Shown: one piece after another, positions 1-62,732 of the stretch | How the letters are laid out: every line of letters starts with the position of its first letter | Position numbering within the stretch: the stretch's first letter is position 1 | Virus record (IMG/VR): IMGVR_UViG_3300044625_001067 | Span: 62,001-126,000 of that record | DNA: 64,000 nt | Reading direction: 5' to 3' (one strand) | The notes under the pieces: generated by a model | What the model saw: the letters and a program-made list of their open reading frames with translations, nothing else | Told to the model about the DNA's origin: nothing | Database searches by the model: none | Made by a program: the position numbers and the translations under genes

Positions 1-137
1 CCAAGTAGAAAAATTGGCACAAGGGTTGGTGAAAGCACTGTGAGCCAGGGCCAGGAAACCTGACCCGTTACTTTCATAGTCATGAATACGGTTTGCAGAA
101 CGATGCAGAGGGCACCCGGCAATTTGATCCAGATCAT
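1..137 (-). CDS. Small membrane protein, partial (runs off window start)
   Basis: ATG at 137 overlaps the stop of the upstream gene (ATGA); reads MIWIKLPGALCIVLQTVFMTMKVTGQVSWPWLTVLSP..., hydrophobic. Confidence 0.6.
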   Translation of the reverse strand, partial: MIWIKLPGALCIVLQTVFMTMKVTGQVSWPWLTVLSPTLVPIFLL

Positions 138-23669: not shown

Positions 23670-24782
23670 TCAGGCAATCCCGAGCAAAACGTCGAGCTTT
23701 TTCGGGGTTAAACCTTCGAGCCACTCTGCAAAGGATCCGACTTTGCCGGATCGAATCGCAAAGCATGCTCCAGAAAGTTCTTTTGACTCGGCAAGTACGG
23801 CTTGAGCGAAATCCTTCTGGTTAAGATGGTTGTGAGCCCTCATGTTCTCGCTCACCGCACTCTCCATCACTTCGATGGAACGCAGGTGAACGTCAAAACC
23901 CCCACGATACTCGGGAAAGTGAAGCAGAAACTCTTCCAAGTCGTCGTTCAGGAAAAGCTCGGAGAAATCCGGTTCGCCGTTTCCTTTAACCCTGTGCAAC
24001 TGGCAATATACGTTGGACTTGTCTTTCTGCCGGTTTCCCTTCCCATCGACAATAATCACTCCTTCAGCGGTACCACGAGAAGAGTCGTTTACAAACTGGG
24101 TTACAGCTTCATGTGAGCGCAGGTCGTAGGTCTGAGCGATATTGAATCGGTTCTCAAAGTACTTGAGATCCTTTTCGTTCAGGTCATCTATTACGCTACG
24201 GACCGTTAAGAGAGGTAAAAGGGGAGTCTCGTAGTCTACAACAATTTTGTTGTCTTTGTGGCACAACTCGTAGACGTAGACAAAATAAGGGTCGAGGTCA
24301 GCCCGGTCATATTCAACTTCATTAAAAACGTGCCAAAACAAGTCGGAGAAGGAGCGGCCCGTGGTCCCGACTTCTGAAGAACCAGCGACTGAACCTGATG
24401 TTGATACCAACCACTCTCCTTTATAGTTGAACAACTTGATCAGAGACCCGTCGTACTTCTCAGCTACACGGGCAGTGGACCAATCAATCTCTGCGGCGTA
24501 ACCCTCCCCGACGTTGAAGAAACGGTCGAAGGCGTACGCAACCAGCCGAAAGTACGGGGAGCCCGTACCATCGTCAACGAGTTCGACTACGGCACCACGG
24601 CAGGCACGAACGATCGGCAGTGCCTTGTCCGCCATCACACTGCCGTACTTTAAGTTGTAGAGAGCAGGGTAACGTTCGTCGCGAGCAACACGAATGTCGT
24701 GCTCGGCAAGTGCTTCAAAAGCAGTCTCGACCCGGTAGTTTAACCAGTCGATTAGAAAGTGGCGCAGGTTTAAAGGTTCCAT
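23670..24782 (-). CDS. T4 Rnl1-like RNA ligase
   Basis: CRGAV, FDRFFN, motif I EKYDGS, YEL, EGVII. Confidence 0.9.
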   Translation of the reverse strand: MEPLNLRHFLIDWLNYRVETAFEALAEHDIRVARDERYPALYNLKYGSVMADKALPIVRACRGAVVELVDDGTGSPYFRLVAYAFDRFFNVGEGYAAEIDWSTARVAEKYDGSLIKLFNYKGEWLVSTSGSVAGSSEVGTTGRSFSDLFWHVFNEVEYDRADLDPYFVYVYELCHKDNKIVVDYETPLLPLLTVRSVIDDLNEKDLKYFENRFNIAQTYDLRSHEAVTQFVNDSSRGTAEGVIIVDGKGNRQKDKSNVYCQLHRVKGNGEPDFSELFLNDDLEEFLLHFPEYRGGFDVHLRSIEVMESAVSENMRAHNHLNQKDFAQAVLAESKELSGACFAIRSGKVGSFAEWLEGLTPKKLDVLLGIA

Positions 24783-24837
24783 GGCAGCTTTAGGTGGGTG
24801 GGACCGTTGAGTTTTGTTTATCTGGGCAAGGTTGGGA

Positions 24838-25467
24838 CTAGCGATTTCGTTTCCCACTGTCCCAGGCTGGCGCTGATCTCCGCTTTGGAAAGTCATGTCC
24901 AAGATCGCCTTTTACTTCCCCGTTAGCGAGGACAACAAGGTGGTCTGTGCCGTAATCGTCCCAGTCGTCGGAGAACTTCGTGTCTACTGACAGAGTAACC
25001 TTGTGCTTGTAAAGAACTTGGCCGAGATCCTTTCTAAACTCGTCCATGTCGAACTTTTCGCCAGGGGTGTACGCGTAGGACGTAACTACTTGGTCTCGAA
25101 GGAGCTGGTCCCAGTCGAGGCAGTTGTACGGGAGTTTTGTCTCTGACATGTCTTCCGGGGAGAAGCAGCTTCGTAGTGTTCTGTGATTACGCCGTTCATT
25201 CGTCCAGGTTCGATCCTCACGGACTCTTACCAGAGTGTAGCAGTATGAGGATGGAACGTTCGGGTTCGTTGCTTTCGGGTGCATCCAGATGTCGGACACA
25301 ACGTAGAGACCGTCTTTTACTGGACTCTTCCGAAAGTGAAGGTAAGGAACTTCAGTGCCCCAGGTTCGACCGTCGGGTGAATTTTTAAGTATTTTTCCAG
25401 GAACAAACACACTGTCCCCTGGCTTCAGCAAAAGTTTTCCTGTAACTGATTCAGGGGGAGACTTCAT
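24838..25467 (-). CDS. Hypothetical protein
   Basis: ORF behind promoter 25495; start moved to ATG 25467. Confidence 0.65.
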   Translation of the reverse strand: MKSPPESVTGKLLLKPGDSVFVPGKILKNSPDGRTWGTEVPYLHFRKSPVKDGLYVVSDIWMHPKATNPNVPSSYCYTLVRVREDRTWTNERRNHRTLRSCFSPEDMSETKLPYNCLDWDQLLRDQVVTSYAYTPGEKFDMDEFRKDLGQVLYKHKVTLSVDTKFSDDWDDYGTDHLVVLANGEVKGDLGHDFPKRRSAPAWDSGKRNR

Positions 25468-29319: not shown

Positions 29320-30177
29320 AATAGGCGGGCTAGTGGCCATCTGCGTCTAAAACTAAGTAAGTCCAACCACCGGCAATTACTGACACCGCTAGAATTTCAG
29401 GGGGCCAGCCCTGTCTCAAGGCACCATAAGCTGATCCGCACGCCACGGCAAAGTACAGGGTGAGTTCAGCCAGCAACTTTAATCCCTTCCTCACCGATTT
29501 GACTTTTTCACTTGGTACGGGCTAACCCTCTAAAACTATGACTCTCTTCGTTACCATAGGAATTTCAAGGTTAACAAGTTCACCCTTAACTTCGTCTCTA
29601 TACTCGCATTTAGTATTCACGAAGGAGTAGTGATCGATGTTACTCTGCCACTTTGTAGTGTAGTTACAATGATTAACTTCCATGTTATCAATGGAGAACT
29701 CGTTCTCAAAGCAATAGCTGTGTTTTCTGCGAGTAACCAGAATAACCTCTGTGTCATCAGGGTACTGGCTTAAAAGTTCTTGTAGGCGTTTATTTAACAT
29801 GGTGAGCTCAGTCGTAAAGGTCCCAAAGATTACTATAGGTGATATCTTGTGTTGTAGAATCCAGTCTAACCTGCCCTTCCCCAATAAGGTCTACAATTCT
29901 CTGTAATTCTCCAAGTATTTTGTGCCCATGGGCGGAGTCGTCCAGTGAGGTTTGCAGTGTCTCGCTATTTGTCTGGTTTGGTAACCTGTAGTTCCCTTTC
30001 AGTGCATCTGTAGCCGTCTCTAGGCACCTTTTGCAAGGAACTTGGAAACTCTCGCCCATTTGAGCGCACGCAGCATGGTCTAAACTCTGAAACACCCAGT
30101 CAGAGCTACAAAGGGTTCTCCCGCACCAGGACGTTCCCTTCATGTCCTCGTGGGTGTGTCATATACACTGCCCAGAG

Positions 30178-30768
30178 TCAGACATAGACGTACTCACGCC
30201 ACTCTTCAACTTCTGCTGTACTGATTGTAACAGACATCTTGCTATAGGGTGCCTTCGGCTTTGAGGCGAGAGTGGTGCCACGTCGAGTGACGCGGGTTTC
30301 CATCATCCCAATCTGAAAGCTGTCCCAGCTGAATGGTAGCGGAGAAACATTCGTGGTTTCCTTTGCAAACACCTTCTTTAGGGCAACCGCCCACTCTTCC
30401 GGGGTGCGATTGTCCTTGCAGTTGTTGCACTCAAGGCAGCTGGTGACAAGGTTTTGCCAAGTGTCCTGCCCTCCTCTTGACTTCGGTATCACATGGTCCA
30501 AGGTTAGTTTCGGACCGGAGTACTCGCAATACTGGCAGGTGTGATTGTCCCGTTTTAGAATCAAGGTGCGAGAGGGCTTCGCCGCTGCCATCTTGGCTTG
30601 GGGAACCTTAACGTATGTCTTTAGGCGAATGGTGCGGCTGGACACGACATGGGCCTTGTCCTTCAATACAAGCACTCTAGCCCTCCGCCACGAGGTCTGG
30701 TTCAAGGGTTCGTACGTGGCATTTAAAACCAGAATGGTTTTCTTGTATGCGATTGTCTTGTAGTCCAT
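30178..30768 (-). CDS. HNH endonuclease (McrA-like, LVLNA family)
   Basis: LVLNATYEP, RDNHTCQYC, TLDHVIPKSRGG, NLVTSCLECN. Confidence 0.9.
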   Translation of the reverse strand: MDYKTIAYKKTILVLNATYEPLNQTSWRRARVLVLKDKAHVVSSRTIRLKTYVKVPQAKMAAAKPSRTLILKRDNHTCQYCEYSGPKLTLDHVIPKSRGGQDTWQNLVTSCLECNNCKDNRTPEEWAVALKKVFAKETTNVSPLPFSWDSFQIGMMETRVTRRGTTLASKPKAPYSKMSVTISTAEVEEWREYVYV

Positions 30769-30867: not shown

Positions 30868-32382
30868 CTAAGCTGCGGGGTTAAGAAGTCGAGTACGAAT
30901 GTTAGGCAGTGAGTTTACATCCTCCCCGTAAACCACGCTGTTTAAGAACACGGTGCGAAGCTCGCCTCGCTGCTCTTGCTCACGAGTCTGCTGTTGATGA
31001 AGAACAAAGTTCTCCCCATCCTTTTCAACTCGCAGTAGACCCAACGCCGACTTTTTCGTGCCGCGATCCGTAATGGGATCCTTCATGGTTTCGACGGCGA
31101 GACCGTTAATTTGCCCCCAGGTTGTTTTGTAAGCAATACCGAACGTGTCTCGTGTATGGTATTGGTAGGTGTAAGAACCGATACCAAACACAATGTTTTC
31201 GGACGCCCACCCAAGCTGCCTCATGTGCTCTAGGATGGCCCTGGCCCGTGGAAGAGTGATTGAGTCGCCGTAAATTAGGCCAACTCGAGGGTTCAGTACC
31301 TTGAAACCCTTCTCGTTTATCGTTCCTCCGAAGACCTCCCAGAGAAGCTCAAGCGAGCCTTTGTACTCTCGGCTACCTAGCTCAGCGTCAGCGTCACCGC
31401 AGATGATTTTCTCAGGGTTACCGCTGTCGGGACGGAAGACGACCTTAGCGATGCCCTGAGAATTCGGACAACGATTTAAGATGTCTTCCTTAAGTGCGGG
31501 TGCAATAACAGTCAGTGCATCCCAGTAGTTCCAAGTGTCAAAAACTACACTGACCGGCCCAGTTGGGTATACTTTTGTAATAATTCGACGAATTGTCTCT
31601 AATTCGTTTCTTTGACCGCCAAGGCAGGTCACACTGTGTTCCGTAGCGGGAATACTACCACCAATGAAATTGGACCCACAATCGTAGTAATCTTCCAAGT
31701 AGTCAATGGAAAGGATTGTATCCGTGCCCTTGAAAGAAAAAAGGTGTCCGATATTGTGTGCAGCGGCATCGTAAATGCCTCCGACTCCGCGAGCGGAGAA
31801 GTCGTGCCCCTGAAAGTCAACAAACTGCGGATTACTCCCTGTGATTTCAGCGTAGTGGTCGAGAAGACGGCGAAACTCGTAGGCGATGGTTGCCACGTTG
31901 ATGGCCTTCCACAGCTCAGACGACTTGGCGGTTTCGACATAGTTGGTTAGCCACGGGGCCAGCCACTTGAAGTCATTGTGAGTGTTTTGCGCCGTCAAAA
32001 ACGGCACTCCAATGTTAACACGGCTACCCTCGGGCAGTGCCTTCACATGTAGCGGCATGTAGCCCAGGTCGTGAAGCTCAGCAATGTGGTCAGTGCCGAC
32101 AACACCTTCTCCGAGCGAGGAGTCCATTCGCCGCTTGTATTTGTCCAACACCTTGGCCTTGGGTTGCTGAAAAAAGGTCTCATTCCAAAGATCCCTCAGC
32201 ATCCATTTCATTGTCCCCTGGATGTTGGCCACGACGATCTTGTGGTCGAAGTCAGCGGGCATGTTCGCCAGACGGTCGGACCTTGCCGTCATGTTGGCGT
32301 AGATTACTTCGGTGCCTTCAGGGTTTTGCGAAGGGTGTCCTGTCTTGTAAAAGTCGGTTGCGTGGGGCGCAAAAATTTTCAT
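30868..32382 (-). CDS. Nicotinamide phosphoribosyltransferase-family protein (Nampt/NadV; Namat candidate)
   Basis: TDFYKTGH, HDFSARG, GTDT, PATEHSV, RPDSG, IYGDSIT, FGIGS, KDPITD. Confidence 0.92.
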   Translation of the reverse strand: MKIFAPHATDFYKTGHPSQNPEGTEVIYANMTARSDRLANMPADFDHKIVVANIQGTMKWMLRDLWNETFFQQPKAKVLDKYKRRMDSSLGEGVVGTDHIAELHDLGYMPLHVKALPEGSRVNIGVPFLTAQNTHNDFKWLAPWLTNYVETAKSSELWKAINVATIAYEFRRLLDHYAEITGSNPQFVDFQGHDFSARGVGGIYDAAAHNIGHLFSFKGTDTILSIDYLEDYYDCGSNFIGGSIPATEHSVTCLGGQRNELETIRRIITKVYPTGPVSVVFDTWNYWDALTVIAPALKEDILNRCPNSQGIAKVVFRPDSGNPEKIICGDADAELGSREYKGSLELLWEVFGGTINEKGFKVLNPRVGLIYGDSITLPRARAILEHMRQLGWASENIVFGIGSYTYQYHTRDTFGIAYKTTWGQINGLAVETMKDPITDRGTKKSALGLLRVEKDGENFVLHQQQTREQEQRGELRTVFLNSVVYGEDVNSLPNIRTRLLNPAA

Positions 32383-33320
32383 GGTTGGTTGCGTGGGGTG
32401 GGGTAGTTTTCGGTACGAAGGTAGGTCAAGTACGAGGGTAACTCTTGGTAAAAGGCTTTATACGGGAGCAAGTTCGCAACGAAAAAGTTGTCGATTAAGC
32501 TCCCAAACACCTTAAAACCCTTGGAGAAAATTCCGTGAGTTACATAGAGGTCAATTCGAGACGGGTCGAACTGACGTAGCACCTTGGCGAGTTCGATAAA
32601 GGTGCGACCGCCATCGCAGATGTCGTCCACAATCAGAAGGTTTTTGCCCTTGTAACTGACGTCTTCTGGAACTTCCGTCCTTAGGATTTGCCCGTCTTCA
32701 GGGTTGCGAACTTTCGTAGCGTACACTACAGAGTGGAGCCCCAGTGTTTGTTGTACGAGGGTTGCTCTTTCGACTGCACCTTTATCCGGAGCAATCACAA
32801 TTGTCTCAGCACTAAACTCTTGCCCCCGGTCTTTGAACTTCTGGAGAAACAGTTGGGGTTGTAGGTTGTTGAACTCGCAGCCGATTTCGGTTCGAAAGAG
32901 CTCATTTGCAACGTGGCTGTGCACGTCCCATGTGTACACCCGGTCGCACACTCCCTTAAGATAAGGGGCGAGAGCTTTTACAAAAGTTCTTAGCGAAAAC
33001 GCTTCCCCTTCAGCGCACTGGCGGTCTTGGCGGCTATAAGGTAAGTACGGGATGTCCAATTGTAGACTTCGCAGCACAGGAAGGTCTTTGATGGCCGACA
33101 GAGTCAGAAGAAGTTCTGCGAAACTTTCTCCGCTGTGTATGTCTGCGTCTACGATAATGTCAGTCGAATTTGTTGGAGTGTCGTGCAACCGGACCTGCCT
33201 TTCACCGGCACTGAACGTAAAGGAGGTCTTTGAAATCTTGTACAGGTTTTGTCCGTCGCGATTCGAGTAAACCTCAATCGGCTCTGTTTTCTGATACTCT
33301 TTAGTTTCGGTCACGTGCAT
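32379..33320 (-). CDS. Ribose-phosphate pyrophosphokinase-like protein (Prs family; Adps candidate)
   Basis: FSAGE, PYLPYSRQDR, DVHS, APDKGA, IVDDICDGGRTF, VTHGIFS; ATGA-coupled to the Nampt-like gene. Confidence 0.92.
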   Translation of the reverse strand: MHVTETKEYQKTEPIEVYSNRDGQNLYKISKTSFTFSAGERQVRLHDTPTNSTDIIVDADIHSGESFAELLLTLSAIKDLPVLRSLQLDIPYLPYSRQDRQCAEGEAFSLRTFVKALAPYLKGVCDRVYTWDVHSHVANELFRTEIGCEFNNLQPQLFLQKFKDRGQEFSAETIVIAPDKGAVERATLVQQTLGLHSVVYATKVRNPEDGQILRTEVPEDVSYKGKNLLIVDDICDGGRTFIELAKVLRQFDPSRIDLYVTHGIFSKGFKVFGSLIDNFFVANLLPYKAFYQELPSYLTYLRTENYPTPRNQP

Positions 33321-33667: not shown

Positions 33668-34036
33668 TCATTGGGTTTGCTCCGGCGAGTGGGTTAACGG
33701 GGAGGTGCGAGTGCGAAAGGGCAGGACATACTGAGTCTCTTCGGACAAATCGAGACTTTCTTGCGCGAGTTGCTCGTATGAGAGCAGCTTAATTGAGAGA
33801 GCACAGTCAAAAGCTTTGGCCACTTTCACCAGGAGATCTATGCTGTGGTCGTTTATCTCGGGGTCTTCTAACCACTCTACGACTCTCAATTTGACCCCAA
33901 CCTTGTCTGCAAGTTGTTGTTTTGTCAGACCTCGCTTTAGTCTGTTTATTTTTACTTGCCAGGAAATCGCTTGCTCAATGGAGGCTTCCATGTAAGCTTC
34001 TCGGTACTCTTTGTCGTCCCACTGCGGGTTTGTCAT
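33668..34036 (-). CDS. XRE-family HTH protein (antitoxin-like)
   Basis: RLKRGLTKQQLADKVGV...WLE...SIDLLVKVAKAF. Confidence 0.8.
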   Translation of the reverse strand: MTNPQWDDKEYREAYMEASIEQAISWQVKINRLKRGLTKQQLADKVGVKLRVVEWLEDPEINDHSIDLLVKVAKAFDCALSIKLLSYEQLAQESLDLSEETQYVLPFRTRTSPLTHSPEQTQ

Positions 34037-34279: not shown

Positions 34280-34846
34280 TCAGAACTTGAAACCGAGGCC
34301 AACGGTGCCGACAGGTGCGTAGGCCGTCCCCGAAACACCATTCGTTTGAGTGGGGAACTTCACGTCAGCGAACCCGACGAGAGACGGCGAGAAGGAACGC
34401 TCAACACCTGCAACGAAGAGGAACTGGGATCCTTGTCCTACACTTGTCTGGTAGTTGGCTTGTCCGTTGTTCGTCAACGCCCATTGACCACCTACACCAA
34501 CGTAAACGTTCGTGTCACTCATATACGAATCAGCAACTTCGCGTCCGGTTAAGGAGAAATCAACGGTGCCAAGGACACCAGCGGCAGAGCCAATTTGGCT
34601 GTCGGGGCCAGCCGCAAAGTTAAAGAAAGGGCGAACAGAGGCGGATACATTGGAAGGCTCGCTCAGACGGAACCGCGACTGAACCGCGACTCCAGCGACG
34701 GTGCGGTTCGAAGTGTACTCAGTACCGTCAACTCCTTGGCGGTTAAGATTCACTCCAACTCCGACGTAGTTTCCAACCTCGGACGCCACTACCGGAGTTG
34801 ACAGGAAGGAAGCAACTGCTAACGCGGGAATAAGTTTAAAAGTCAT
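34280..34846 (-). CDS. Outer-membrane beta-barrel protein
   Basis: Signal peptide, alternating amphipathic strands (NYVGVG, VYVGVG), terminal GLGFKF. Confidence 0.8.
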   Translation of the reverse strand: MTFKLIPALAVASFLSTPVVASEVGNYVGVGVNLNRQGVDGTEYTSNRTVAGVAVQSRFRLSEPSNVSASVRPFFNFAAGPDSQIGSAAGVLGTVDFSLTGREVADSYMSDTNVYVGVGGQWALTNNGQANYQTSVGQGSQFLFVAGVERSFSPSLVGFADVKFPTQTNGVSGTAYAPVGTVGLGFKF

Positions 34847-34969
34847 GTTTGTTTTTGTGTGTGTTTTTCTGTACAGAACCGGGTTACATATCCCGGAAGG
34901 TAGTTGTAAGGGTGCGAACCTTTGCAAAACTTTGCTAACCCTCTTAGAGTTACAACTACGGTGGTTGCG

Positions 34970-35215
34970 TTAGTTCTCAGGGCTTATGGAGCCATGGCCA
35001 GGGCCATAAGTACAAAGGGCGACAGGGCTGCCGTTCTCCGTGCCTTCGGTCCAGTTTCCCCCAGATCGAACACAGTCACTCATTCTGTACGGACTTTTAC
35101 CAAAGAGTAAACTCGATGAGACAGAAAGGAGTATGACAGTGATAGACACGAAAATTAAGAGTTCTATGAGAGTGAAGCCGTTAGGTGCTTTCGGTTTAAG
35201 ATGTAACATTTTCAT
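34970..35215 (-). CDS. Type IV pilin-like protein
   Basis: Class III signal peptide G/FTLIEL with E5, hydrophobic helix, C-terminal Cys pair. Confidence 0.8.
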   Translation of the reverse strand: MKMLHLKPKAPNGFTLIELLIFVSITVILLSVSSSLLFGKSPYRMSDCVRSGGNWTEGTENGSPVALCTYGPGHGSISPEN

Positions 35216-35478
35216 GGACTAACCTCAAGAGAATTACATTCAATGGTGAAAAACGGTGTTGAACGGGTAGGCAATATTGTGAATACAATCCCGAGCACTC
35301 TTGCAACATCTGCCACAAATCCCACGTCTACCTCGGAGCCACGCTCAATCTTTCGAAGAAGTTCTACGGGTATTTGTGCAGCAAACGCAATGTCCTGCTT
35401 GGACCATCCCTGAGAAAGCCGTGCTTCGCACAATTGAGTCCCAAATCGTTGGGCGTGGGTTGAGTCGTAGAAAATCAT
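35212..35478 (-). CDS. XRE-family HTH protein
   Basis: ARLSQGWSKQDIAFAAQI...KIERG...VARVLG. Confidence 0.8.
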   Translation of the reverse strand: MIFYDSTHAQRFGTQLCEARLSQGWSKQDIAFAAQIPVELLRKIERGSEVDVGFVADVARVLGIVFTILPTRSTPFFTIECNSLEVSP

Positions 35479-35530
35479 TGGGCAAGATGGCTAAGGAAAG
35501 GGTGACAACCAGGGTCATCACCCGAAGGGG

Positions 35531-35884
35531 CTAAATGCGAGTGATGCAAACGTTAGCGAGTCCACTCTCAGTTACTCGGAGACGCTGAGCAGATCCGTGC
35601 CCCAGGTCGATGATTCGTCCACCGACATAGGGTCCTCGGTCGTTAATGCGAACGTCGGCAATAAGCCCGTTGTCGCGATTGACAACTCGCACCCAAGACC
35701 CGAGGGGGAGGTACGGGTGAGCAGCGGTCATGGTTCCGGGTCGGAAAGTCTCTCCGTTGGCAGTTTTATTTCCGTAGAGGCCTGGACCGTACCAGCTGGC
35801 TTGACCGCACTGCCTTGCTTGAGCGGGTGCTCCGGAGAGAAGTCCGGCGGCGAGAAAGAATGAAGCGAGTCTTGTAAGACGCAT
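35531..35884 (-). CDS. rlpA: RlpA-like double-psi beta-barrel lytic transglycosylase
   Basis: Signal peptide, GQASWYG, TANGE, TAAHPYLPLG, VRINDRGPY, RIIDL; start moved to ATG 35884. Confidence 0.9.
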   Translation of the reverse strand: MRLTRLASFFLAAGLLSGAPAQARQCGQASWYGPGLYGNKTANGETFRPGTMTAAHPYLPLGSWVRVVNRDNGLIADVRINDRGPYVGGRIIDLGHGSAQRLRVTESGLANVCITRI

Positions 35885-35993
35885 GAAAAAAGTAGAGTTC
35901 AACATCCGTGTTTGTTGCATTGCGCAACCACGGCTCAGTGCCCGTTGGCCCAGCGAAGGTGTACCTAGCTGAAGCCGTTTCGGGCTGGACTCA

Positions 35994-36038
35994 AGCTTAG
36001 CTCGTAAAAGGCCCAAGGTAAAGTTCGGGAAACCGCCC
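35994..36038 (-). promoter_or_regulatory. Repeated early promoter element (variant)
   Basis: GGGCGGTTTCCC box, TTTACC-17-TAAGCT. Confidence 0.6.
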
Positions 36039-36039
36039 A

Positions 36040-36678
36040 TCAACCTTCCTCCTGGCGCAGCATCGCCAAGTTGTTTTCGTAGAAGAGGCGAAGGTTGTCG
36101 TAGGTTTTGACCGGCTGATCGTAGTAACTGCTTCCATTGTAAGTTGGAAGGGAAGCCCATTCTGGTGCGAGTCTTGCGAGTAGAGTTGGGGTAATCTTCC
36201 CAGAGTCAGCGAGGTGCAAAGCGTCGCGTCGCTCTATTAAGTACAAGGCAGCCTGATCCTGGTTAGTGGGACCGAAATCGCTTAGGTTGAGCTTTCGGGC
36301 TGCCTCATACCAAGTACTTGGCAGAAACTGGTAGGCCCCCGCTGCTGCGCTAGCATAACGCAGCGAGTAACGTACTTGATTTGGATGTCTGTCTAGCGTG
36401 GACACCGTTCCACCCCCAAATACAACCCGGTAGCCATCATTATGGCCGTCTTTCCAAGTTCCTTCAGCGAAGCGAATGGTGTTTAAAAGGGCTCGACGCT
36501 CTGGGGTGAGTTTGTAAGCGTGAGTCGGCAGAGAATTGATTGGACCGCAGCCTGTGCAAATGAAGCGCGATTCGAAAGTTGTTTCTGGGGCAATGTCCCT
36601 AGCGGCAACGGTGTTGCTGAAAGGGGTTGCAGCAGTTCCAACGAGGGAGACGGCCATAAGTGTAGCAAGGTTGAGCAT
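36040..36678 (-). CDS. Lambda-R-like muramidase/lytic transglycosylase (GH104-type) with signal peptide
   Basis: ALLNTIRFAEGT, AAGAYQFL, DFGPTNQD, EWASLP. Confidence 0.9.
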   Translation of the reverse strand: MLNLATLMAVSLVGTAATPFSNTVAARDIAPETTFESRFICTGCGPINSLPTHAYKLTPERRALLNTIRFAEGTWKDGHNDGYRVVFGGGTVSTLDRHPNQVRYSLRYASAAAGAYQFLPSTWYEAARKLNLSDFGPTNQDQAALYLIERRDALHLADSGKITPTLLARLAPEWASLPTYNGSSYYDQPVKTYDNLRLFYENNLAMLRQEEG

Positions 36679-37203
36679 TTATTGAAGAGAATTCGGCATC
36701 CGTATAGGAAACGGTCACTCACCTGTTTCAAGGTGCGTTTTCCCACGGCACATTTGATTTAAGAGCGCAATGTTAGGCTCCGAGTCCTACCTTGTCTGCG
36801 AAGACAGGGAACCCACTCATAACGGGCGACGTATTTACGTCTCAGGACTTTCACAGTATATCGCTTTCTCGAATTGGTAAACTACCCGGCGTTGAAGGCG
36901 ATAGGTATGTGTTCCACGCAATATTCACGGAATAATTCTTTCGTTTCTTCCCAGCTTTCCTCGCTCGCTGGCTTCCCGAGTGCGGCTGCGGCTTGAGGAA
37001 TGTTTCACTGGGCTGTGAAGAGCTTTTCCATTGCCCAAGTATGATCAATGTCTTTCACTACCCTTCTTGGGATTCCTTAACCGTGGTCTTTCACTCGGAG
37101 GTGAAACCTCAAAGTAAACATCTTGCATCCTCTCTTTCAAGCCTGACTCAGGCTTGGGGGGTGTTTTCTCAATGTCCTTCATAGTAAGTGTTTAAGGTGA
37201 AAA

Positions 37204-38124
37204 CTAGTCGAGTTCAACGACAAGAACGCCGTCTTCTCTTTTTGTAACTTTGCGAACGGTTTGTTCGGTGTTTCGAGGTAAGATAGCCTCATTTTCATAA
37301 GGTACATCAGAATACATGTTTACCGGAGTTAAACTTCTATTCTTTGAGACAAACAAGACACTTCTAGACGTTCTGGAAGCACCAAGGAAACCATTTGCAG
37401 TCTTTTCGTCTAAGGAATAGGACCCGAAACCGGGGTCTTTTAGAACGGACCCAGGGGTCAGTTTTTCCACTTGGGCGTACAAGTCAGCGGATTTTAACGG
37501 GAAATTAACCCCACGATAGAATGAGATACCTTCATTGTTTTTCGGGAGCTTACCTAGAGCTGAATCAAATTCTTTTACAAACTCCTTAGTGATCTCAGGT
37601 TTTTTGCAAGTGGGAGGGTTTCTTAAACAGGCGTTAGTCTTTTTGTGCGGGCGGTCAGACATGTCTGAGGGGGCTGTGTAGTCATAAACGGATTTAGCCT
37701 CCGCGCTACTTAGCTTAACCTTTCTTTGTGCTTCGTTTATCCTTGTAAGGACTTCTTCATGTGTGTCTTTCTTTGACACCTTTTGTTGGTTGTCCTGTGC
37801 TAGCTTATCTGTAAGCTTTTCGAGAGAGGAGTTCAGTTCAATGGGTATCTTTTTACTTGGCTTAACCTTCGCCCCGGTACTCTTTGTTTTTCTCGGCGTC
37901 TTAGTGGCTTTCGCACGCTTAGGCTTTTTAGTTGCCACCTCTTTCGCTTGCTTTGTACCTTTCCTGCACTTTCCAGAAGTCCCGTACGCAGTACCGTCCT
38001 CTCGAACACAACGAGTGTAGTCGTACGGCTCTAAGCCTAGCTCAGAGAAGTTACAGGACGATAGTGCTCCAACCATCTCTTCGCACTTCCTTAGCGATTG
38101 CTCTGAAAAAGACCCTTGGCTCAT
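37204..38124 (-). CDS. Tag-fused ADP-ribosyltransferase (R-S-E clade, VIP2/Alt-like)
   Basis: N-terminal RCVREDGTAYGTSGKCRKG tag; C-terminal FYRG, GFGSYS, ENEAILPR. Confidence 0.85.
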   Translation of the reverse strand: MSQGSFSEQSLRKCEEMVGALSSCNFSELGLEPYDYTRCVREDGTAYGTSGKCRKGTKQAKEVATKKPKRAKATKTPRKTKSTGAKVKPSKKIPIELNSSLEKLTDKLAQDNQQKVSKKDTHEEVLTRINEAQRKVKLSSAEAKSVYDYTAPSDMSDRPHKKTNACLRNPPTCKKPEITKEFVKEFDSALGKLPKNNEGISFYRGVNFPLKSADLYAQVEKLTPGSVLKDPGFGSYSLDEKTANGFLGASRTSRSVLFVSKNRSLTPVNMYSDVPYENEAILPRNTEQTVRKVTKREDGVLVVELD

Positions 38125-38195
38125 AACTGCGACTACTCTTATAAACAAACTTACCCCTAATGCACCCACGACGGGGGTGAGTTTTCAATGAGGAC

Positions 38196-38352: not shown

Positions 38353-39552
38353 TTAGTCCGGTGTTAATTCAGGGTCGTTCGCTACGATGATTGCTCCACG
38401 GTTGAGAACAACCCAGAAGTCTTGGCCATCGGTCTGTGGAACTCTATACGCATGTATTCCCAGAGATGCAGCGGCTGACCCCACATCGTGATGGTCGTAC
38501 CCCGTAATCTCTCTTGCTTTCTGCAGGGTCTCTCCTTCCCACTGCCTAAACTGCTTCCCGTCTCCCTCAAACTGTACGAGTCGAGCGTCGGACCGGAATG
38601 CAAACGCTGAAACCCTTAGTGTTTTATTTCCACTTTCCCCAGAGTAGTCTTTCGCTGTATCTTGGGCCCATCTATCATGCTTAACCTTGCCAGATAAAGG
38701 GGAAGAAGCAGAGTAACTCCCACTCCCGTAAATCCCGCCACCAGGAAAGTGCTTGTCTCCGTCTGGACCACCACCTTTGAACTGCAAGGAAAACTCATTT
38801 GAACCTACGCCGCGATAAGCCACAATTGGCCTTCCGTCGGGGTTCCGGGCTATATCTTTTCTTGATTCCAGTTCCGATCGTGTTGCAACAACCTCCGGTC
38901 GAGCATGAAAACCTTGCCGTTCGTACACAGAAGTGAGAATCGGCGGTAACAAGGTGCCCTTGCGAGCACTCGAAAGTGTTCGACCGAGCTCCATACCTTC
39001 CTTTTGCAGATGTAAAAGCTTCTCTCTTGACACGTCGTCGGTAGGCTCTCCTATTGCTCGGACTCTTTTCTTCAGTGCTTCAAGTTCCTTTTCGAGAAGC
39101 TCAACCTCTTTCTCAACCGTGGCTTTCAGTAAAGGTTTGCTCGATCCAGGTGTTTGCGTGTACTTCGGCGAGTTTCTCACCAATTCGTCGTATTGATCCT
39201 GAAGGGCACCCTTTTGTTGTGTTTGCTCTGCCTTCTTCGCCAAGTGAGTCTTTAGGCGAAGATACCGTAAGGCGGTAAGGGCACTCTCTGTGAGGGGTGT
39301 GCGGTACCCTGGCTTTGACAAAAGCATTCCCTCAAGAGTCCTTAGATTCTTGTTTAGAGCGTCAGGATCATTCTTTTCGTAAATCTTGACATTTTTGAGA
39401 ACAGACTCTCTTCGAGTGCTACGGTCTTCTTTTGCGGACTCCACTCCCTTGCGACATTGTCCTGCTGTACCGTACACCCCACCGTCCGGTTTCACACAAC
39501 GTGTAAAGTCGTGCACAAACGCTAGGGTATCGGGGGAAATTTCTCCGTACAT
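38353..39552 (-). CDS. Tag-fused protein with C-terminal ART-like fold
   Basis: N-terminal RCVKPDGGVYGTAGQCRKG tag, coiled coil, then AYRG...GGGIYGSGSY...AKDY...WVVLNR. Confidence 0.65.
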   Translation of the reverse strand: MYGEISPDTLAFVHDFTRCVKPDGGVYGTAGQCRKGVESAKEDRSTRRESVLKNVKIYEKNDPDALNKNLRTLEGMLLSKPGYRTPLTESALTALRYLRLKTHLAKKAEQTQQKGALQDQYDELVRNSPKYTQTPGSSKPLLKATVEKEVELLEKELEALKKRVRAIGEPTDDVSREKLLHLQKEGMELGRTLSSARKGTLLPPILTSVYERQGFHARPEVVATRSELESRKDIARNPDGRPIVAYRGVGSNEFSLQFKGGGPDGDKHFPGGGIYGSGSYSASSPLSGKVKHDRWAQDTAKDYSGESGNKTLRVSAFAFRSDARLVQFEGDGKQFRQWEGETLQKAREITGYDHHDVGSAAASLGIHAYRVPQTDGQDFWVVLNRGAIIVANDPELTPD

Positions 39553-39582
39553 TCGTACAACCGAACTAAGCACCAGGGTACT

Positions 39583-40018: not shown

Positions 40019-40062
40019 ATTATACGTTATTTCAGAGTAGAAACAAGGGGGGAAACCGTCCC
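40019..40062 (-). promoter_or_regulatory. Repeated early promoter element
   Basis: TTGTTT-16-TATAAT, GGGACGGTTTCCC box. Confidence 0.7.
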
Positions 40063-40887
40063 AAACGAAAGGTCGTACAAAGTGCTCGCTATGAGCAAAA
40101 GTCTTTCGCTGTCGTGCAACCCCGAAACCCATCGCTTAGGAATAGCCTTGTAACCGTAGTAAGCACCTGCTAGCTGCCCCGTAATCGCAGCAACCGTGTC
40201 TGAGTCGTCCCCGTAGTTCACAGCCTGCAGGATGGCCTCTTCAAAGGACGAAGTTGACCCAAAGTGGTAGAGTGCGGCGTTTAAGGACTTCGGTGCGTAC
40301 CCGGAATTTTCAATTCCCTCCGGCGAGACTTCAGGTTTTCCCCCCGTGCCATTTAAGTATTGGTGCAGCAAACGACCGAGATCTTTGCATAGGTCGGATG
40401 CCAAGTGGCCATGGGTTGTTGATGATGACGCGTCACACGCTGCTACAGCGTCCTGCTCACTTGACTTGTGGTACACAATAGAAACGGGGGATAAACGCAT
40501 CAAAGACCCGTTTCCTTTCGAATTCTCCGGATAGAGACTCAAAGACCCCTCAACGAGAAAAGTCTCAATTGCACGAAGTGTTCCATTGCCGATGTCAAAA
40601 CAGACACCTGTTGAGCTGTTCCTTCCGTACTCGTACCAGTTGGAGTACCGACGCATTTGGTCTCCAAGATTGATCTGCCCATTGCAATGAATAAAAGACT
40701 CGGCAAGGCAAACAGCCTGCGATGTGTCGTCCGTCCAGTAGCCTGACGGCAGATTAAAGGGCCCCCCTGCTCGGTAACCTGTGACGGTCTCAAAGGTCCC
40801 CGGTGGAGAGAACTCCACTGGCGCACCCATCGCGTCACCGATCGCAAGGCCAATAAAGGCTCCGAGGCATTTGTCGAAAGTTGTCAT
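40027..40887 (-). CDS. ADP-ribosylglycohydrolase (DraG/ARH family)
   Basis: GLAIGDAMG, WTDDT, GNGSLMR, TTH, GDDSDTVAAITGQLAGA. Confidence 0.93.
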   Translation of the reverse strand: MTTFDKCLGAFIGLAIGDAMGAPVEFSPPGTFETVTGYRAGGPFNLPSGYWTDDTSQAVCLAESFIHCNGQINLGDQMRRYSNWYEYGRNSSTGVCFDIGNGTLRAIETFLVEGSLSLYPENSKGNGSLMRLSPVSIVYHKSSEQDAVAACDASSSTTHGHLASDLCKDLGRLLHQYLNGTGGKPEVSPEGIENSGYAPKSLNAALYHFGSTSSFEEAILQAVNYGDDSDTVAAITGQLAGAYYGYKAIPKRWVSGLHDSERLLLIASTLYDLSFGTVSPLVSTLK

Positions 40888-40977
40888 TTTTCCTTGTATG
40901 GTTCTTGTTTGAGCGGGCTTGCTTGGGTGGATATAAGACCCAAGGTAAGGGTTAGAGTCTCGCACCATGGGCAAGGG

Positions 40978-42384: not shown

Positions 42385-42715
42385 TGTAAGGGGGCCGAAA
42401 CCCCCGAGTTATGAGTCAGAGTGCGGTTGCTCAAACGGCAACGGCAATCCTCTCGAATTTGACGATGTTGTTAGCGTCTATTTTGTGCTTATGCAAGCGG
42501 CTTTCACTCAGGCGACATCTTTACCCTAGCGAGACCATGGCACCCCCTTGACTAGAGGTGGGAGTTTAACCCACAGTGACCCTGCCTTCTCAGTAAGTCG
42601 GAAGGTTGAAGAAGGGACGGTCACGTTCTCAAATGGAGGTGAGGGGATTCGAACCCCTGTATAGGGCACTATCTTCCAGAGCTACACCCAGTTTAATGTC
42701 GTGTGGTAGGACTGT
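42385..42715 (-). ncRNA. ssrA: Permuted two-piece tmRNA (outer ends approximate)
   Basis: T-arm AGGGGTTCGAATCCCCT plus CACCTCCA (ends 42634) precedes the 5' strand GGGGGTG (starts 42547), giving G3.U70; tag ORF 42431-42475 ANNIVKFERIAVAV*. Confidence 0.9.
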
Positions 42716-44959: not shown

Positions 44960-46102
44960 TCACCGGTTCTCAATACAACCGAGACTTTGAAATTTTTCCA
45001 CAGTCTCAGCACAGAGAGTGTTGATGAGTTGGTCATCTACCGTGTTCGGCAAGACGCACTCGTTCTTCCCCACGTGCTCAGCCTCCTTAAAGAGCTGAGT
45101 TACAATTGTGCTTAGTTCGTCATACGTAATCCTGCCGTACTTAATGTCCAGAAGAAAATCTGCGTCCCCAACCAACTTTCTATTCACAAGAAGCTCTCCG
45201 GTTCGCATTCCCTCAATGGCCATTTTCATAAGTCGAACACAGTGGCTGGCGTTCTTCCCGTCGTACCCACAGGCCCGCTCAATTTCGGATCGCTTCACAT
45301 TCCGATTAGTCAACCAATCTTGGTAATTACTCCACCGTTTTAAATCTGACCGGTACTGTTGGCTTGAGTGGAGAAGGGCCATGTACTCATCGCTTGCTCT
45401 CGTGATTTTCTGTGTTTCATTGAAGCACTCCTCCGGTAAGACACTCTGCTTCAAAATTCCTTTCCAATCAACACGGTCGTTGAGAAGCTCGTACAGCTCG
45501 ACTGAAGGTTGGTAGTACTCGATTCTGTCTTTAATCAGCAAGTACAAGTACTCGATGAAAGACTCGATTTGAGACGGGGTTAAGCTCGGGGAAGAGACAC
45601 CGTAGTCCTCCCACTCCGGTCGCCGTGTTGGAGGGTTTAAGAGCCATTTGCGGTGAGTCTCCATTTTCTTGATCTGGGACCTTGCGTACTGAACGAATGT
45701 GCCAGAGATTCTCCTGGAAATTAGCTTCCTCCGGTTGTCAATTAGCGACTGCCCCAGAAAGTCAAGGTACAGGTAGCTGTCGGGAGTCTGCCAGAGCATC
45801 TCCAAAATGTTGGGGTTTTGCGACCGCAACAAGCTCAGGTACCTGCGAATGCCGTACACCACTGAATCCGAGTTATCTAACTCAGGGAATCTAGAGTTGA
45901 ACTCACCCTCGTCTTGTTGCTCCCCTACCCACCCCTTATCCTTTTGCTCAAATGTTTCGAGAGTGGTGTAAAACCGCTGTGGCGCCACACAGATTCCCTT
46001 AAAGTCCAAGTCGGACATCTCGGTGTTGAGGCCATAGGCGTGGCTGCCTGACTTGCAAAACAGGATCATCCCGTCTTCAATTTCTTTTCGTGTAATTGTC
46101 AT
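44960..46102 (-). CDS. Pol-beta-superfamily nucleotidyltransferase (RlaP/YcgL-like)
   Basis: GSHAYGLNTEMSDLDFKG, NPNILEML, GYDGKNASHCVRL. Confidence 0.88.
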   Translation of the reverse strand: MTITRKEIEDGMILFCKSGSHAYGLNTEMSDLDFKGICVAPQRFYTTLETFEQKDKGWVGEQQDEGEFNSRFPELDNSDSVVYGIRRYLSLLRSQNPNILEMLWQTPDSYLYLDFLGQSLIDNRRKLISRRISGTFVQYARSQIKKMETHRKWLLNPPTRRPEWEDYGVSSPSLTPSQIESFIEYLYLLIKDRIEYYQPSVELYELLNDRVDWKGILKQSVLPEECFNETQKITRASDEYMALLHSSQQYRSDLKRWSNYQDWLTNRNVKRSEIERACGYDGKNASHCVRLMKMAIEGMRTGELLVNRKLVGDADFLLDIKYGRITYDELSTIVTQLFKEAEHVGKNECVLPNTVDDQLINTLCAETVEKFQSLGCIENR

Positions 46103-59331: not shown

Positions 59332-59405
59332 CGCCCTGTGCAGGATTTGAACCTGCGACATTCTCTTTAGGAAAGAGATGTTCTAATCCACTGAACTAAC
59401 AGGGC
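59332..59405 (-). tRNA. tRNA-Arg(CCT)
   Basis: Cloverleaf; anticodon arm TCTCT-TTCCTAA-AGAGA; T loop GTTCAAATC; no encoded CCA. Confidence 0.92.
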
Positions 59406-59477: not shown

Positions 59478-59551
59478 CGCCCCCTAGAGGATTCGAACCT
59501 CTGACACCACGGGCCGAAACCGTGTGCTCTAATCCGCTGAGCTAAGGGGGC
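59478..59551 (-). tRNA. tRNA-Arg(TCG)
   Basis: Cloverleaf; anticodon arm CACGG-TTTCGGC-CCGTG; GTTCGAATC. Confidence 0.92.
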
Positions 59552-60845: not shown

Positions 60846-60918
60846 CACCGGCAGAGGGATTTGAACCCCCGACATCAAGCTTAGAAGGCTCGCGTTCTGT
60901 CCGCTGAACTATGCCGGT
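60846..60918 (-). tRNA. tRNA-Arg(TCT)
   Basis: Cloverleaf; anticodon arm CGAGC-CTTCTAA-GCTTG. Confidence 0.9.
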
Positions 60919-62660: not shown

Positions 62661-62732
62661 AAGCTGTAGCAGGAATCGAACCTGCGACCCACTCCGTATG
62701 AAAGAGCTGTTCTACCGCTGAACTATACAGCC
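62661..62732 (-). tRNA. tRNA with CAT anticodon (Met or lysidine-Ile), atypical
   Basis: Cloverleaf; arm GCTCT-TTCATAC-GGAGT; G1.U72 pair and U73 discriminator. Confidence 0.8.

What the first reader, a model, noticed from the sequence alone, without database searches (positions are those of the whole stretch)
35885..36850. Shared leader motif before both peptidoglycan-lytic genes: candidate cis-regulatory RNA
Seen: both genes have long leaders (~100 and ~170 nt), unlike their neighbours. Each ends in ACGGATGYYGAAYTCT (35894-35909 and 36688-36703, 13/16 identical) exactly 9 nt before the ATG. Each also has an upstream GCCGTGG whose CCGT can pair with that ACGG to close a hairpin-containing stem. 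Inference: a conserved riboswitch-like or protein-binding element holding cell-wall enzymes translationally in check. I cannot assign it to a known Rfam family.
Basis: partly seen in the sequence, partly recalled or inferred. Interest (0 to 1): 0.62.

Follow-up and report, generated by a model that had tools for sequence, protein, structure and literature searches.

The report
Cyanophage leader RNA before murein hydrolases
The shared sequence in front of the two cell-wall-cutting genes is real: it is a folded leader RNA found in well over a hundred cyanophage sequences, cultured phages included, always just before exported peptidoglycan hydrolase genes, absent from the RNA family library, and of unproven function.

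Summary
Both 16-mers lie on the minus strand, 9 nt before the two ATGs. Each is closed by a CCGT/ACGG stem.

The window is part of a 277-kb lake cyanophage genome that carries psbA. The two copies are the only ones in it.

Covariance models built here found 162 copies in phage contigs and one strong copy in each of five cultured Synechococcus phages: S-PM2, S-SRM01, DSL-LC02, DSL-LC03 and S-CREM1.

Three nested helices (P1-P3) are supported. About 93% of cells are paired, 12-14 of 15 pairs show compensatory changes, and no shuffle matched this.

The flanks are nearly invariant: 5' G-W-G-C-C, and 3' GGAUG-NN-GAAUUC. The upstream AUG lies a fixed 21-22 nt before the main start codon.

Every classifiable downstream gene (158 of 158) belongs to one of three unrelated exported murein-hydrolase families: RlpA/DPBB, lambda-lysozyme-like and Phage_lysozyme2.

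No Rfam 15 family matches. No copy was found in about 156 picocyanobacterial genomes.

It is best read as a new cis-regulatory 5' UTR RNA that acts on translation initiation. Whether it senses a ligand, a host protein or the ribosome is open. T4-type RegA is unlikely, because this phage lacks it.

The parts
36676..36756 (-). Full-length copy of the leader RNA motif before gene 2. Elements, 5' to 3': flank UGUGCC; P1 C36748-G36700, C36747-G36701, G36746-C36702, U36745-A36703; P2 36743-36736 with 36713-36707; P3 36735-36731 with 36724-36720, loop UGAAAC; 3'-side internal loop AGUGAC 36719-36714; tail; AUG.
   Evidence: Model R2 scores 70 bits, E 6e-17 within the whole phage record. Sequence. A relative with 60% protein identity (L006) shows compensatory changes in P2 and P3.
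36688..36703 (-). It is the P1 3' strand plus the near-invariant tail. Its AUG (36699-36697) lies 21 nt before the main AUG and opens a 6-codon frame (MPNSLQ) whose stop abuts the main AUG.
35882..35941 (-). Short-form copy before gene 1. Elements: flank CUGAGCC; P1 C35933-G35906 to G35929-C35910; one inner hairpin GUUGC/GCAAC (35928-35924 with 35918-35914) and an AAA bulge; tail; AUG.
   Evidence: Model R2 scores 31.3 bits, E 1.4e-5 within the record. The minimum-free-energy fold gives the same stem. The leader is conserved in L003-L021.
35894..35909 (-). Its AUG (35905-35903) is in frame with the main AUG 21 nt downstream.
36040..36678 (-). Gene 2: an exported lambda-lysozyme-like (GH104-type) muramidase or lytic transglycosylase, 212 aa, with a hydrophobic N-terminal signal-like segment.
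   Evidence: Matches PDB 1AM7 and 3D3D lambda lysozyme at E 7e-16. tblastn finds phage endolysins and GH104 proteins. No Pfam hit.
35531..35884 (-). Gene 1: an exported RlpA-like double-psi beta-barrel (DPBB) protein, 117 aa, with a signal peptide ending AQA.
   Evidence: Pfam DPBB_1 E 9e-20. The closest cellular relatives are picocyanobacterial RlpA proteins.
35500..35523 (-). Terminator-like hairpin with a T run just after the stop codon of gene 1. It is the likely end of the two-gene unit.
   Evidence: Consensus scan only.
36757..36860 (-). Upstream part of the gene 2 leader. It holds further hairpins, among them CCCG-UUAUGAG-UGGG at about 36826-36812, which resembles the UUAUGAG-loop hairpin of relatives. 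It also holds a weak -10-like TATACT (36860-36855).
   Evidence: Read from the sequence and compared with relatives. Inference; no start site is mapped.

Best explanation
The two sites are copies, one full-length and one short-form, of a conserved structured RNA in the 5' untranslated leader of phage genes for exported peptidoglycan hydrolases. Shown: a stem P1 (CCGUG/YACGG) closes either a P2-P3 arm, whose loop is mostly GNRA, or a single hairpin. P1 is framed by near-invariant unpaired nucleotides: 5' G-W-G-C-C, and 3' GGAUG-NN-GAAUUC. The element sits at a fixed distance from the main start codon (upstream AUG to main AUG 21-22 nt). It occurs once or twice per phage genome, and only before such genes. 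Inferred mechanism: the mRNA is made from its own promoter, which in most relatives is a consensus sigma-70 promoter. The folded stem base plus the 12-nt tail covers about -24 to -10 relative to the start codon. This is where a 30S subunit must sit on these Shine-Dalgarno-less messages. I take it to be a platform whose occupancy sets how often the main AUG is used, and so limits or times production of enzymes that would damage the wall if made freely. The occupant would be a host-supplied partner: a small ligand, a host protein or the ribosome itself. It is probably not specific to one phage lineage, because the motif is shared by T4-like cyanophages and by this non-T4-like 277-kb phage. The confidence given (0.5) is for the inferred mechanism; that this is a functional cis-acting RNA I put at about 0.9.
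For: Structure: on model-fitted alignments 93.1-93.5% of cells are paired. 13/15, 14/15 and 12/15 pairs show changes on both sides. 0 of 500 shuffles reach these values, and slid registers give 39-62% paired. An independent mutual-information scan ranks model pairs as its top seven column pairs. RNAalifold on a plain MAFFT alignment recovers P1 with compensatory changes. Conservation: the leader is 77-90% identical where the coding DNA is 66-74% in most comparisons. Specificity: G000 has 2 copies. Ten other whole phage records have 1-2 copies at E<=1e-5, always before these genes. Of 160 loci picked by a tail pattern alone, 124 carry the full motif. All 158 classifiable downstream ORFs fall in three hydrolase families: Phage_lysozyme2-like 95, DPBB 55, GH104 8. 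Fixed geometry: the upstream AUG lies 21 nt (19 distinct sequences) or 22 nt (47) before the main AUG. Own promoter: TTGACA-N17-TATAAT/TATTAT occurs in 105 of 144 distinct upstream regions against 8 of 144 shuffled. The -10 box ends mostly 123-135 nt before the AUG. Lineage spread: G000 and G002 lack the gp23 capsid and RegA genes that S-PM2, S-SRM01 or G004 carry, and G000 carries psbA. RNA libraries from three studies hold contigs across both leaders.
Against: There is no direct evidence of regulation, binding or even the transcription start. The RNA-library contigs show presence only, and DNA carry-over is possible. Predicted unpaired probabilities of the tail and start region are middling (0.35-0.65) and show no clear open or closed switch. 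No conserved alternative pairing (expression platform) and no pseudoknot was detected, though invariant columns cannot covary. The pair counts rest on alignments fitted to the model. The window's two copies lack the consensus promoter and the AUGAG-N4-UGA box seen in most relatives.
Confidence: 0.5

Rival explanations
1. It is a true metabolite-binding riboswitch. The pocket is formed by the P1 base, the GWG flank and the GGAUG..GAAUUC tail. It senses a compound that reports cell-wall or infection state and gates translation.
For: The regulon is functionally coherent across three unrelated enzyme families and two phage lineages. Unpaired nucleotides are near-invariant next to a covarying helix. 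Peripheral stems are optional, as in several riboswitch classes (short forms). No phage protein is obviously shared.
Against: There is no multi-helix junction with a conserved core. No pseudoknot or alternative pairing was detected. The short forms leave only about 35 conserved nucleotides. No ligand candidate follows from the gene context.
Confidence: 0.25
2. It is a ribosome-sensed attenuator built on tiny upstream reading frames. In most relatives a mini-ORF (AUG-AGN-NNN-UGA) ends 12-15 nt before P1, so a terminating ribosome would melt P1. The invariant second AUG at the 3' foot of P1, often followed at once by UAG, captures or releases ribosomes 21-22 nt before the real start.
For: The AUGAG-N4-UGA box occurs in 91 of 125 full-length leaders and in 0 shuffled, at a tight 12-15 nt from P1. 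The second AUG is nearly invariant and at a fixed distance. AUG-UAG start-stop occurs in S-PM2, S-SRM01, DSL-LC03 and in all 65 distinct sequences of the second pattern scan, which selected for it.
Against: The frame and length of the second upstream ORF are not conserved: 1-11 codons, or open into the gene. Nucleotides after a UAG stop stay conserved, so coding does not explain the tail. The mini-ORF box is missing from the short forms and from both copies in the window. AUG and UGA also lie in a weak hairpin that could account for their spacing.
Confidence: 0.2
3. It is the operator of a phage-encoded translational repressor of the T4 type (RegA-like, or an autogenous operator like those of gp43 and gp32). 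These proteins bind a hairpin plus an adjacent single strand over the ribosome site.
For: The architecture is the same: a hairpin base plus a single-stranded tail next to the start codon. RegA is present in S-PM2, S-SRM01 and G004.
Against: RegA (PF01818) is not found in G000 or G002, which are 98-100% complete and carry the motif. The motif is restricted to one or two genes per genome, unlike the broad RegA regulon (established knowledge of T4, from memory).
Confidence: 0.05
4. It is an mRNA stability or processing element: a protective 5' structure, or an RNase E or RNase III site, that sets transcript half-life rather than translation.
For: A stable stem-loop is followed by an A/U-rich single strand. 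Many relatives also have a promoter-proximal hairpin with a U tract (57 of 86), which suggests control at the RNA level.
Against: The fixed 21-22-nt spacing to the start codon points to the ribosome and is not needed for a stability element.
Confidence: 0.08
5. It is a DNA-level site, such as an operator or promoter element, or a chance resemblance.
For: GAATTC is a palindrome. XRE-type HTH genes lie nearby (35212-35478, 33668-34036).
Against: Compensatory changes keep pairing in helices whose sequence and length vary (18-50 nt between the P1 arms), which fits RNA and not a dimeric DNA site. The element lies downstream of the consensus promoters. Chance is excluded by 160+ conserved copies.
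Confidence: 0.03

Closest known systems
ydaO/yuaA c-di-AMP riboswitch (Rfam RF00379)
   Same: A 5' leader RNA linked to cell-wall hydrolase genes, for example resuscitation-promoting factors of Actinobacteria (from memory). It is the known precedent for riboswitch control of wall-lytic enzymes.
   Different: No match, even at E<=5-10. ydaO is a large pseudo-symmetric fold of about 120+ nt. This motif is a single arm with an invariant 3' tail, and it is phage-borne.
Cyanophage cis-regulatory RNA motifs wcaG, manA, glnA/Downstream-peptide, PhotoRC-II (Weinberg et al. 2010, PMC2864571; listed for S-CREM1 in PMC9964418)
   Same: Structured 5' UTR motifs carried by T4-like cyanophages and found by comparative genomics. 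Most have no known ligand.
   Different: The sequence, fold and gene association differ. None of these families matches the sites. In S-CREM1 those motifs lie at other coordinates than the copy at 38094-38175.
T4 translational operators (RegA sites; gp43 and gp32 autogenous operators)
   Same: A hairpin plus an adjoining single strand at the ribosome binding site, used to repress translation of phage mRNAs (from memory).
   Different: There is no sequence relation. RegA is absent from this phage. The partner here is unknown and probably host-supplied.
Leader-peptide translational attenuators (ermC/cat type) and bacterial start-stop sites
   Same: Very short upstream reading frames placed so that a ribosome on them would remodel a downstream helix near the main start.
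   Different: The main start is not sequestered in the conserved helix. The peptides are not conserved. The mini-ORF is absent from part of the family, including the window.
Automated catalogue of 8,495 candidate structured RNAs from IMG/VR (PMC10690425)
   Same: It used the same data source and the same kind of evidence, and it lists candidates within 25 bp upstream of domain-annotated genes. This abundant motif may be one of its unnamed DNAVirus_N entries.
   Different: The paper's text describes no such motif. Its supplementary tables are not held, so this could not be checked. The regulon, the cultured-phage copies and the geometry are worked out here.

Membership tests
Any Rfam 15 family (4227 models) | A covariance-model match at or near the family's gathering score | tested here: not met
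   No match overlaps either site at E<=10 in window 35400-37300. None overlaps the S-PM2, S-SRM01 or S-CREM1 copies at E<=5. The gathering-threshold scan of the window finds only 4 tRNAs and a permuted tmRNA.
Conserved structured cis-regulatory 5' UTR RNA (riboswitch-candidate class) | A secondary structure supported by compensatory base changes across diverged sequences | tested here: met
   P1, P2 and P3 all covary. For example, P1 pair 11-82 is GC 42, CG 17, UA 5, and pair 12-81 is UA 36, AU 27.
Conserved structured cis-regulatory 5' UTR RNA (riboswitch-candidate class) | A position in the sense orientation directly upstream of functionally related genes | tested here: met
   158 of 158 classifiable downstream ORFs are murein hydrolases of three families. 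The motif ends at the start codon in all hits.
Metabolite riboswitch | Highly conserved unpaired nucleotides that could form a pocket | tested here: inconclusive
   The invariant GWG flank and the GGAUG..GAAUUC tail exist. There is no conserved junction, and the inner arm is dispensable in short forms.
Metabolite riboswitch | An expression platform with mutually exclusive pairings | tested here: inconclusive
   No conserved alternative helix appears in folds or in the mutual-information scan. Invariant columns hide covariation.
Metabolite riboswitch | Direct, selective ligand binding | not testable with these tools
   This needs in-line probing, ITC or a reporter assay.
T4 RegA regulon operator | The repressor gene is present in every genome that carries the site | tested here: not met
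   PF01818 is absent from G000 (98% complete) and G002 (100%). It is present in S-PM2, S-SRM01 and G004.
Host (picocyanobacterial) rlpA leader element | The same motif before the cellular homologues | tested here: not met
   No hit in 14 picocyanobacterial rlpA loci. None in 5 whole genomes. The best per-genome E among 151 further genomes is 0.013. Tail-pattern hits in 201 genomes lie in orthologous coding DNA.

The most novel reading that the evidence does not exclude
This is a new orphan riboswitch class carried by cyanophages of at least two lineages. Its small aptamer (P1 base, GWG flank and GGAUG..GAAUUC tail) reads a host metabolite that reports wall or infection state, and so times translation of exported murein hydrolases.
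Probability: 0.25. Interest if true: 0.85.

Novelty: new member of a known kind. Interest (0 to 1): 0.62.

Why it matters
Phages are thought to control wall-degrading enzymes mainly through holins and gene timing. Here three unrelated families of signal-peptide-bearing murein hydrolases share one RNA leader, in abundant freshwater, estuarine and marine cyanophages. This points to a dedicated post-transcriptional gate on wall remodelling during infection of picocyanobacteria.

The same leader sits before an RlpA-like gene in S-PM2 and before a Phage_lysozyme2 gene in DSL-LC03. In both phages the neighbourhood holds nrdB and RusA. The leader therefore behaves as a portable expression module.

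Because the motif is in S-PM2, a long-used model phage with a culturable host, the question can be tested directly. If a ligand exists, this would be a new riboswitch class. If the ribosome or a host protein is the partner, it would show how start sites are chosen on messages without a Shine-Dalgarno sequence.

Tried and rejected
**Rfam.** Three scans found nothing at the sites.

**Near-DNA search of cultured phages with the window's own region.** No match. The cultured copies were reached only through diverged relatives.

**Host origin.** The closest cellular RlpA genes, from Cyanobium, Synechococcus and Vulcanococcus, have a different conserved leader (..GAGTTYCGYCTGTYATG) and give no model hit. 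The weak hits L180-L184 lie in coding DNA or are isolated tail look-alikes. The 3- to 4-fold excess of the tail pattern over its reversed control in 201 host genomes comes from recurring orthologous coding sequence.

**Pseudoknot or extra pairing between the 5' flank (UAGAG) and the tail (UUCUA).** Not supported. Column 7 (A/U) does not covary with its would-be partner, and no non-model pair stands out in the mutual-information scan.

**The tail as protein-coding sequence.** Rejected. The frame relative to the gene varies (21 or 22 nt), codon 2 reads S, P, L or stop, and conservation continues after a UAG.

**The tail as a T4-type late promoter or a leaderless-start promoter.** No consistent match by eye. 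Consensus sigma-70 promoters lie about 125-135 nt upstream instead.

**CsrA-like site (RUACARGGAUGU, from memory).** The resemblance to UAUACGGAUGU was noted, but its GG is paired in P1. Whether the hosts encode CsrA was not checked here, and the idea was not pursued.

**Thermodynamic accessibility profile.** Uninformative.

**RNAalifold on the 5' leader part.** It failed on the MAFFT alignment, so the promoter-proximal hairpin is described from inspection only.

**RNA evidence.** Only assembled contigs were available. They cannot show start, strand or level.

**Literature.** Four searches found no description of this motif.

Full report
**1. The observation**

Both genes lie on the minus strand.
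- Gene 1 (35531-35884) is a 117-aa signal-peptide protein with a DPBB/RlpA domain (Pfam DPBB_1, E 9e-20).
- Gene 2 (36040-36678) is a 212-aa protein with a hydrophobic N-terminus. It is related to phage lambda lysozyme (PDB 1AM7, E 7e-16) and to phage GH104 endolysins.

Read on the minus strand, ACGGATGTTGAACTCT (35909-35894) and ACGGATGCCGAATTCT (36703-36688) each stand 9 nt before the ATG. They share 13 of 16 bases. GCCGTGG lies at 35934-35928 and at 36749-36743. In each leader its CCGT(G) pairs with (Y)ACGG around an inner hairpin.

The pattern has no other copy in the window or in the whole 277,244-bp record. A 13/16 match at equal offset is rare but not unheard of among ORF pairs of this window (3 of 2775). 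The case therefore rests on the comparative evidence below.

**2. The genome**

The window is bases 62001-126000 of an IMG/VR virus record judged 98% complete.
- It carries phage-type genes: a Ro/TROVE-like RNA-binding protein, a T4-type RNA ligase, NAMPT with PRPP synthetase, and an ADP-ribosylglycohydrolase.
- It carries four tRNAs and a permuted tmRNA.
- Elsewhere in the record there is a psbA gene (E 8.6e-86).
- DNA runs that hold the sequence come from lake water.
- The closest cellular RlpA homologues are from freshwater and marine picocyanobacteria.

It is therefore a large cyanophage. It lacks a T4-type gp23 capsid gene and RegA, so it is not a T4-like phage.

**3. The motif is a family**

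Leaders of homologous genes in related viral contigs keep the same sequence even where the proteins are 40-60% identical. They show compensatory changes.

I built a covariance model from eight sequences (R1) and rebuilt it from 29 hits (R2). Two scans of the viral collection with nothing but a 15-16-nt tail pattern returned 160 loci. Of these, 124 carry the complete motif.

Cultured Synechococcus phages carry one strong copy each:

| Phage | Position | Gene that follows |
|---|---|---|
| S-PM2 | 117359-117440 | S-PM2p160, 'lipoprotein precursor' |
| S-SRM01 | 181929-182011 | gp278 |
| DSL-LC03 | 164615-164695 | 'tail tip lysozyme' |
| DSL-LC02 | 107309-107390 (-) | 'virion structural protein' |
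| S-CREM1 | 38094-38175 | 'lipoprotein A' |

**4. Structure**

The consensus, 5' to 3', is:
- the flank G-W-G-C-C;
- P1 (5 bp);
- P2 (5 bp), directly stacked on P1;
- UG;
- P3 (5-6 bp, mostly with a GNRA loop);
- a 6-10-nt loop on the 3' side;
- the P2 3' strand, then UA(U), then the P1 3' strand;
- the tail (GG)AUG-NN-GAAUUC-N;
- 9-10 A/U-rich nt, then the main AUG.

Pair counts on three alignments:

| Alignment | Distinct rows | Cells paired | Pairs with changes on both sides | Shuffles reaching the observed values |
|---|---|---|---|---|
| A6 | 29 | 93.1% | 13 of 15 | 0 of 500 |
| A8 | 75 | 93.4% | 14 of 15 | 0 of 500 |
| A9 | 65 | 93.5% | 12 of 15 | 0 of 500 on four of five measures; 4 of 500 on 'further pair types' |

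Slid registers give only 39-62% paired cells. These alignments are fitted to the model, which favours it. Two checks do not depend on that:
- RNAalifold on a plain MAFFT alignment finds P1 with compensatory changes.
- A mutual-information scan of all column pairs puts seven model pairs on top.

P1 itself covaries: CCGU/ACGG, CCCA/UGGG, CCUA/UAGG and CCGA/UCGG all occur.

Short forms keep the flanks, P1 and the tail, but replace P2-P3 with one hairpin. Gene 1 of the window has such a short form. The leader is more conserved than the coding DNA behind it in most comparisons.

**5. Gene association**

In eleven whole phage records the motif occurs once or twice, always before these genes. Of the 162 model hits, 158 have a classifiable downstream ORF:
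- 95 are Phage_lysozyme2-like (Pfam PF18013, E about 1e-16).
- 55 are DPBB/RlpA-like.
- 8 are GH104-like.
- None is anything else.

The ORF starts that I inspected begin with signal-peptide-like or lipoprotein-like N-termini. In S-PM2 and DSL-LC03 the same leader lies in a neighbourhood that holds nrdB and RusA, but it precedes an RlpA-like gene in one and a Phage_lysozyme2 gene in the other. The leader thus acts as a module that outlasts its cargo.

The canonical endolysin genes of S-SRM01, which lie just upstream, carry no copy.

**6. Wider leader architecture in relatives**

- A consensus sigma-70 promoter (TTGACA-N17-TATAAT or TATTAT) occurs in 105 of 144 distinct upstream regions, against 8 of 144 shuffled. 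S-PM2 has it too. The -10 box ends mostly 123-135 nt before the AUG.
- A variable-sequence hairpin follows the promoter. It often carries a U tract (57 of 86).
- An AUGAG-N4-UGA box reads as the mini-ORF M-(R/S)-X-stop. It occurs in 91 of 125 full-length leaders and in none of the shuffled ones. It ends 12-15 nt before P1.

The window's own two leaders lack the consensus promoter and this box at that position. Gene 2's leader does hold a CCCG-UUAUGAG-UGGG hairpin like those of some relatives.

**7. Mechanism**

Shown:
- The RNA fold.
- Its invariant flanks.
- The fixed 21-22 nt between the conserved upstream AUG and the main AUG.
- The exclusive link to exported murein hydrolases.

Inferred: the element works on translation initiation. 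My reasons:
- The conserved stem base and tail cover about -24 to -10, the part of the message a 30S subunit must occupy.
- These leaders have no Shine-Dalgarno sequence.
- The strict spacing has no obvious use for a stability element or a DNA site.

The partner is unknown. The motif spans T4-like cyanophages (G004 and the cultured phages) and the non-T4-like lineage of the window. I therefore favour a host-supplied partner: a ligand, a host protein or the ribosome. RegA is disfavoured because G000 and G002 lack it.

My estimates:
- About 0.9 that this is a functional cis-acting RNA.
- About 0.5 that it acts as described on initiation.
- Within that, roughly 0.25 for a metabolite riboswitch and 0.2 for an upstream-ORF or start-stop attenuator. 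The remainder goes to host-protein binding.

RNA evidence is weak. Contigs from four metatranscriptome runs of three studies cover both leaders and both genes. Contigs cannot show starts, strand or level.

**8. Comparison with what is known, and novelty**

No Rfam 15 family matches any tested copy. The S-CREM1 genome paper lists only abiF, wcaG, manA and glnA from Rfam, all at other coordinates. Four literature searches found no description.

A 2023 automated catalogue of 8,495 candidate structured RNAs from IMG/VR (PMC10690425) may contain this motif as an unnamed entry. Its supplements are not held, so I could not check.

I file it as a new member of a known kind: an orphan cis-regulatory leader RNA. 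It is not a member of any named family.

**9. Verdict**

The proposed action, translational restraint by a ligand or a protein, remains an inference. Interest 0.62.

Noticed in passing
window 42431-42689 (-); tRNAs at 59332-59405, 59478-59551, 60846-60918, 62661-62732 (-): A permuted (two-piece) tmRNA gene (67.9 bits against a gathering score of 47) and four tRNA genes lie inside a phage genome. From memory, two-piece tmRNA is typical of cyanobacteria and alphaproteobacteria, so this would fit the cyanobacterial host.
   Followed up: no
window 37204-38169 (-), 38353-39573 (-), 40027-40974 (-): An ADP-ribosyltransferase (Pfam ADPrib_exo_Tox, 1e-13) lies directly upstream of the hydrolase pair. 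Next to it is a 406-aa ORF with a similar N-terminal segment by eye and no Pfam hit. An ADP-ribosylglycohydrolase (3.5e-61) follows. Together they look like a writer/eraser set.
   Followed up: no
window 134-1612 (-), 23670-24902 (-), 44960-46102 (-): A Ro/TROVE-like RNA-binding protein (phrog_850, 3e-152), a T4-type RNA ligase and an RlaP-type nucleotidyltransferase are present. This is an RNA-repair-like gene set in the phage.
   Followed up: no
window 30868-33320 (-): Nicotinamide phosphoribosyltransferase and ribose-phosphate pyrophosphokinase genes lie side by side. They look like an NAD salvage pair.
   Followed up: no
window 34280-34927 (-) and 34970-35215 (-); L045 3417-4910: Downstream of gene 1 lie a secreted beta-rich protein and a small protein with a type IV pilin N-methylation motif. 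The secreted protein is related by BLAST clustering to SLH+OprB porin genes that sit near the motif in many relatives; S-SRM01 annotates a porin there too. Together they suggest a phage cell-envelope module.
   Followed up: partly
Relatives, e.g. L045 2350-2395, L304 (S-PM2) 2495-2520, L305 (S-SRM01) 2440-2530: Upstream of the core motif most relatives have three further elements: a consensus sigma-70 promoter, a covarying hairpin that often looks like an intrinsic terminator, and an AUGAG-N4-UGA mini-ORF ending 12-15 nt before P1. Some first hairpins carry UUAUGAG in their loop.
   Followed up: partly
S-PM2 L304 2599-2961 versus DSL-LC03 L306 2583-3200: In both phages the neighbourhood holds nrdB and RusA and the leader is the same, but the gene behind it differs: RlpA-like in S-PM2, Phage_lysozyme2-like in DSL-LC03. 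This looks like cassette exchange behind a conserved leader. DSL-LC03 also has an rlpA gene elsewhere (about 73.6 kb), and the model gave no hit near it.
   Followed up: partly
window ORF starts at 2275 and 60825 (-); 61269 and 5426 (-): Other pairs of ORFs share upstream strings at the same offset. AACCAACCTYRCAAAAC lies 1 nt before the ATG (14/16 identical in the best window). GSTATAGT lies about 8-9 nt before the ATG (13/16 identical in the best window). These may be further phage promoter or start-site signals.
   Followed up: no
G005 (record of L059) 29607-30179 and 31064-31372: psbA matches in two pieces about 0.9 kb apart. This suggests an interrupted psbA in that relative, perhaps by an intron or an inserted element.
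   Followed up: no
L182 (picocyanobacterial genome G032, C1:2768793-2768852): An isolated tail look-alike, AUGUUGAAUUCUAUUUUCUUUA-AUG, has the 22-nt spacing but no P1 partner, and only an 8-codon frame follows. It is probably chance or a relic.
   Followed up: partly
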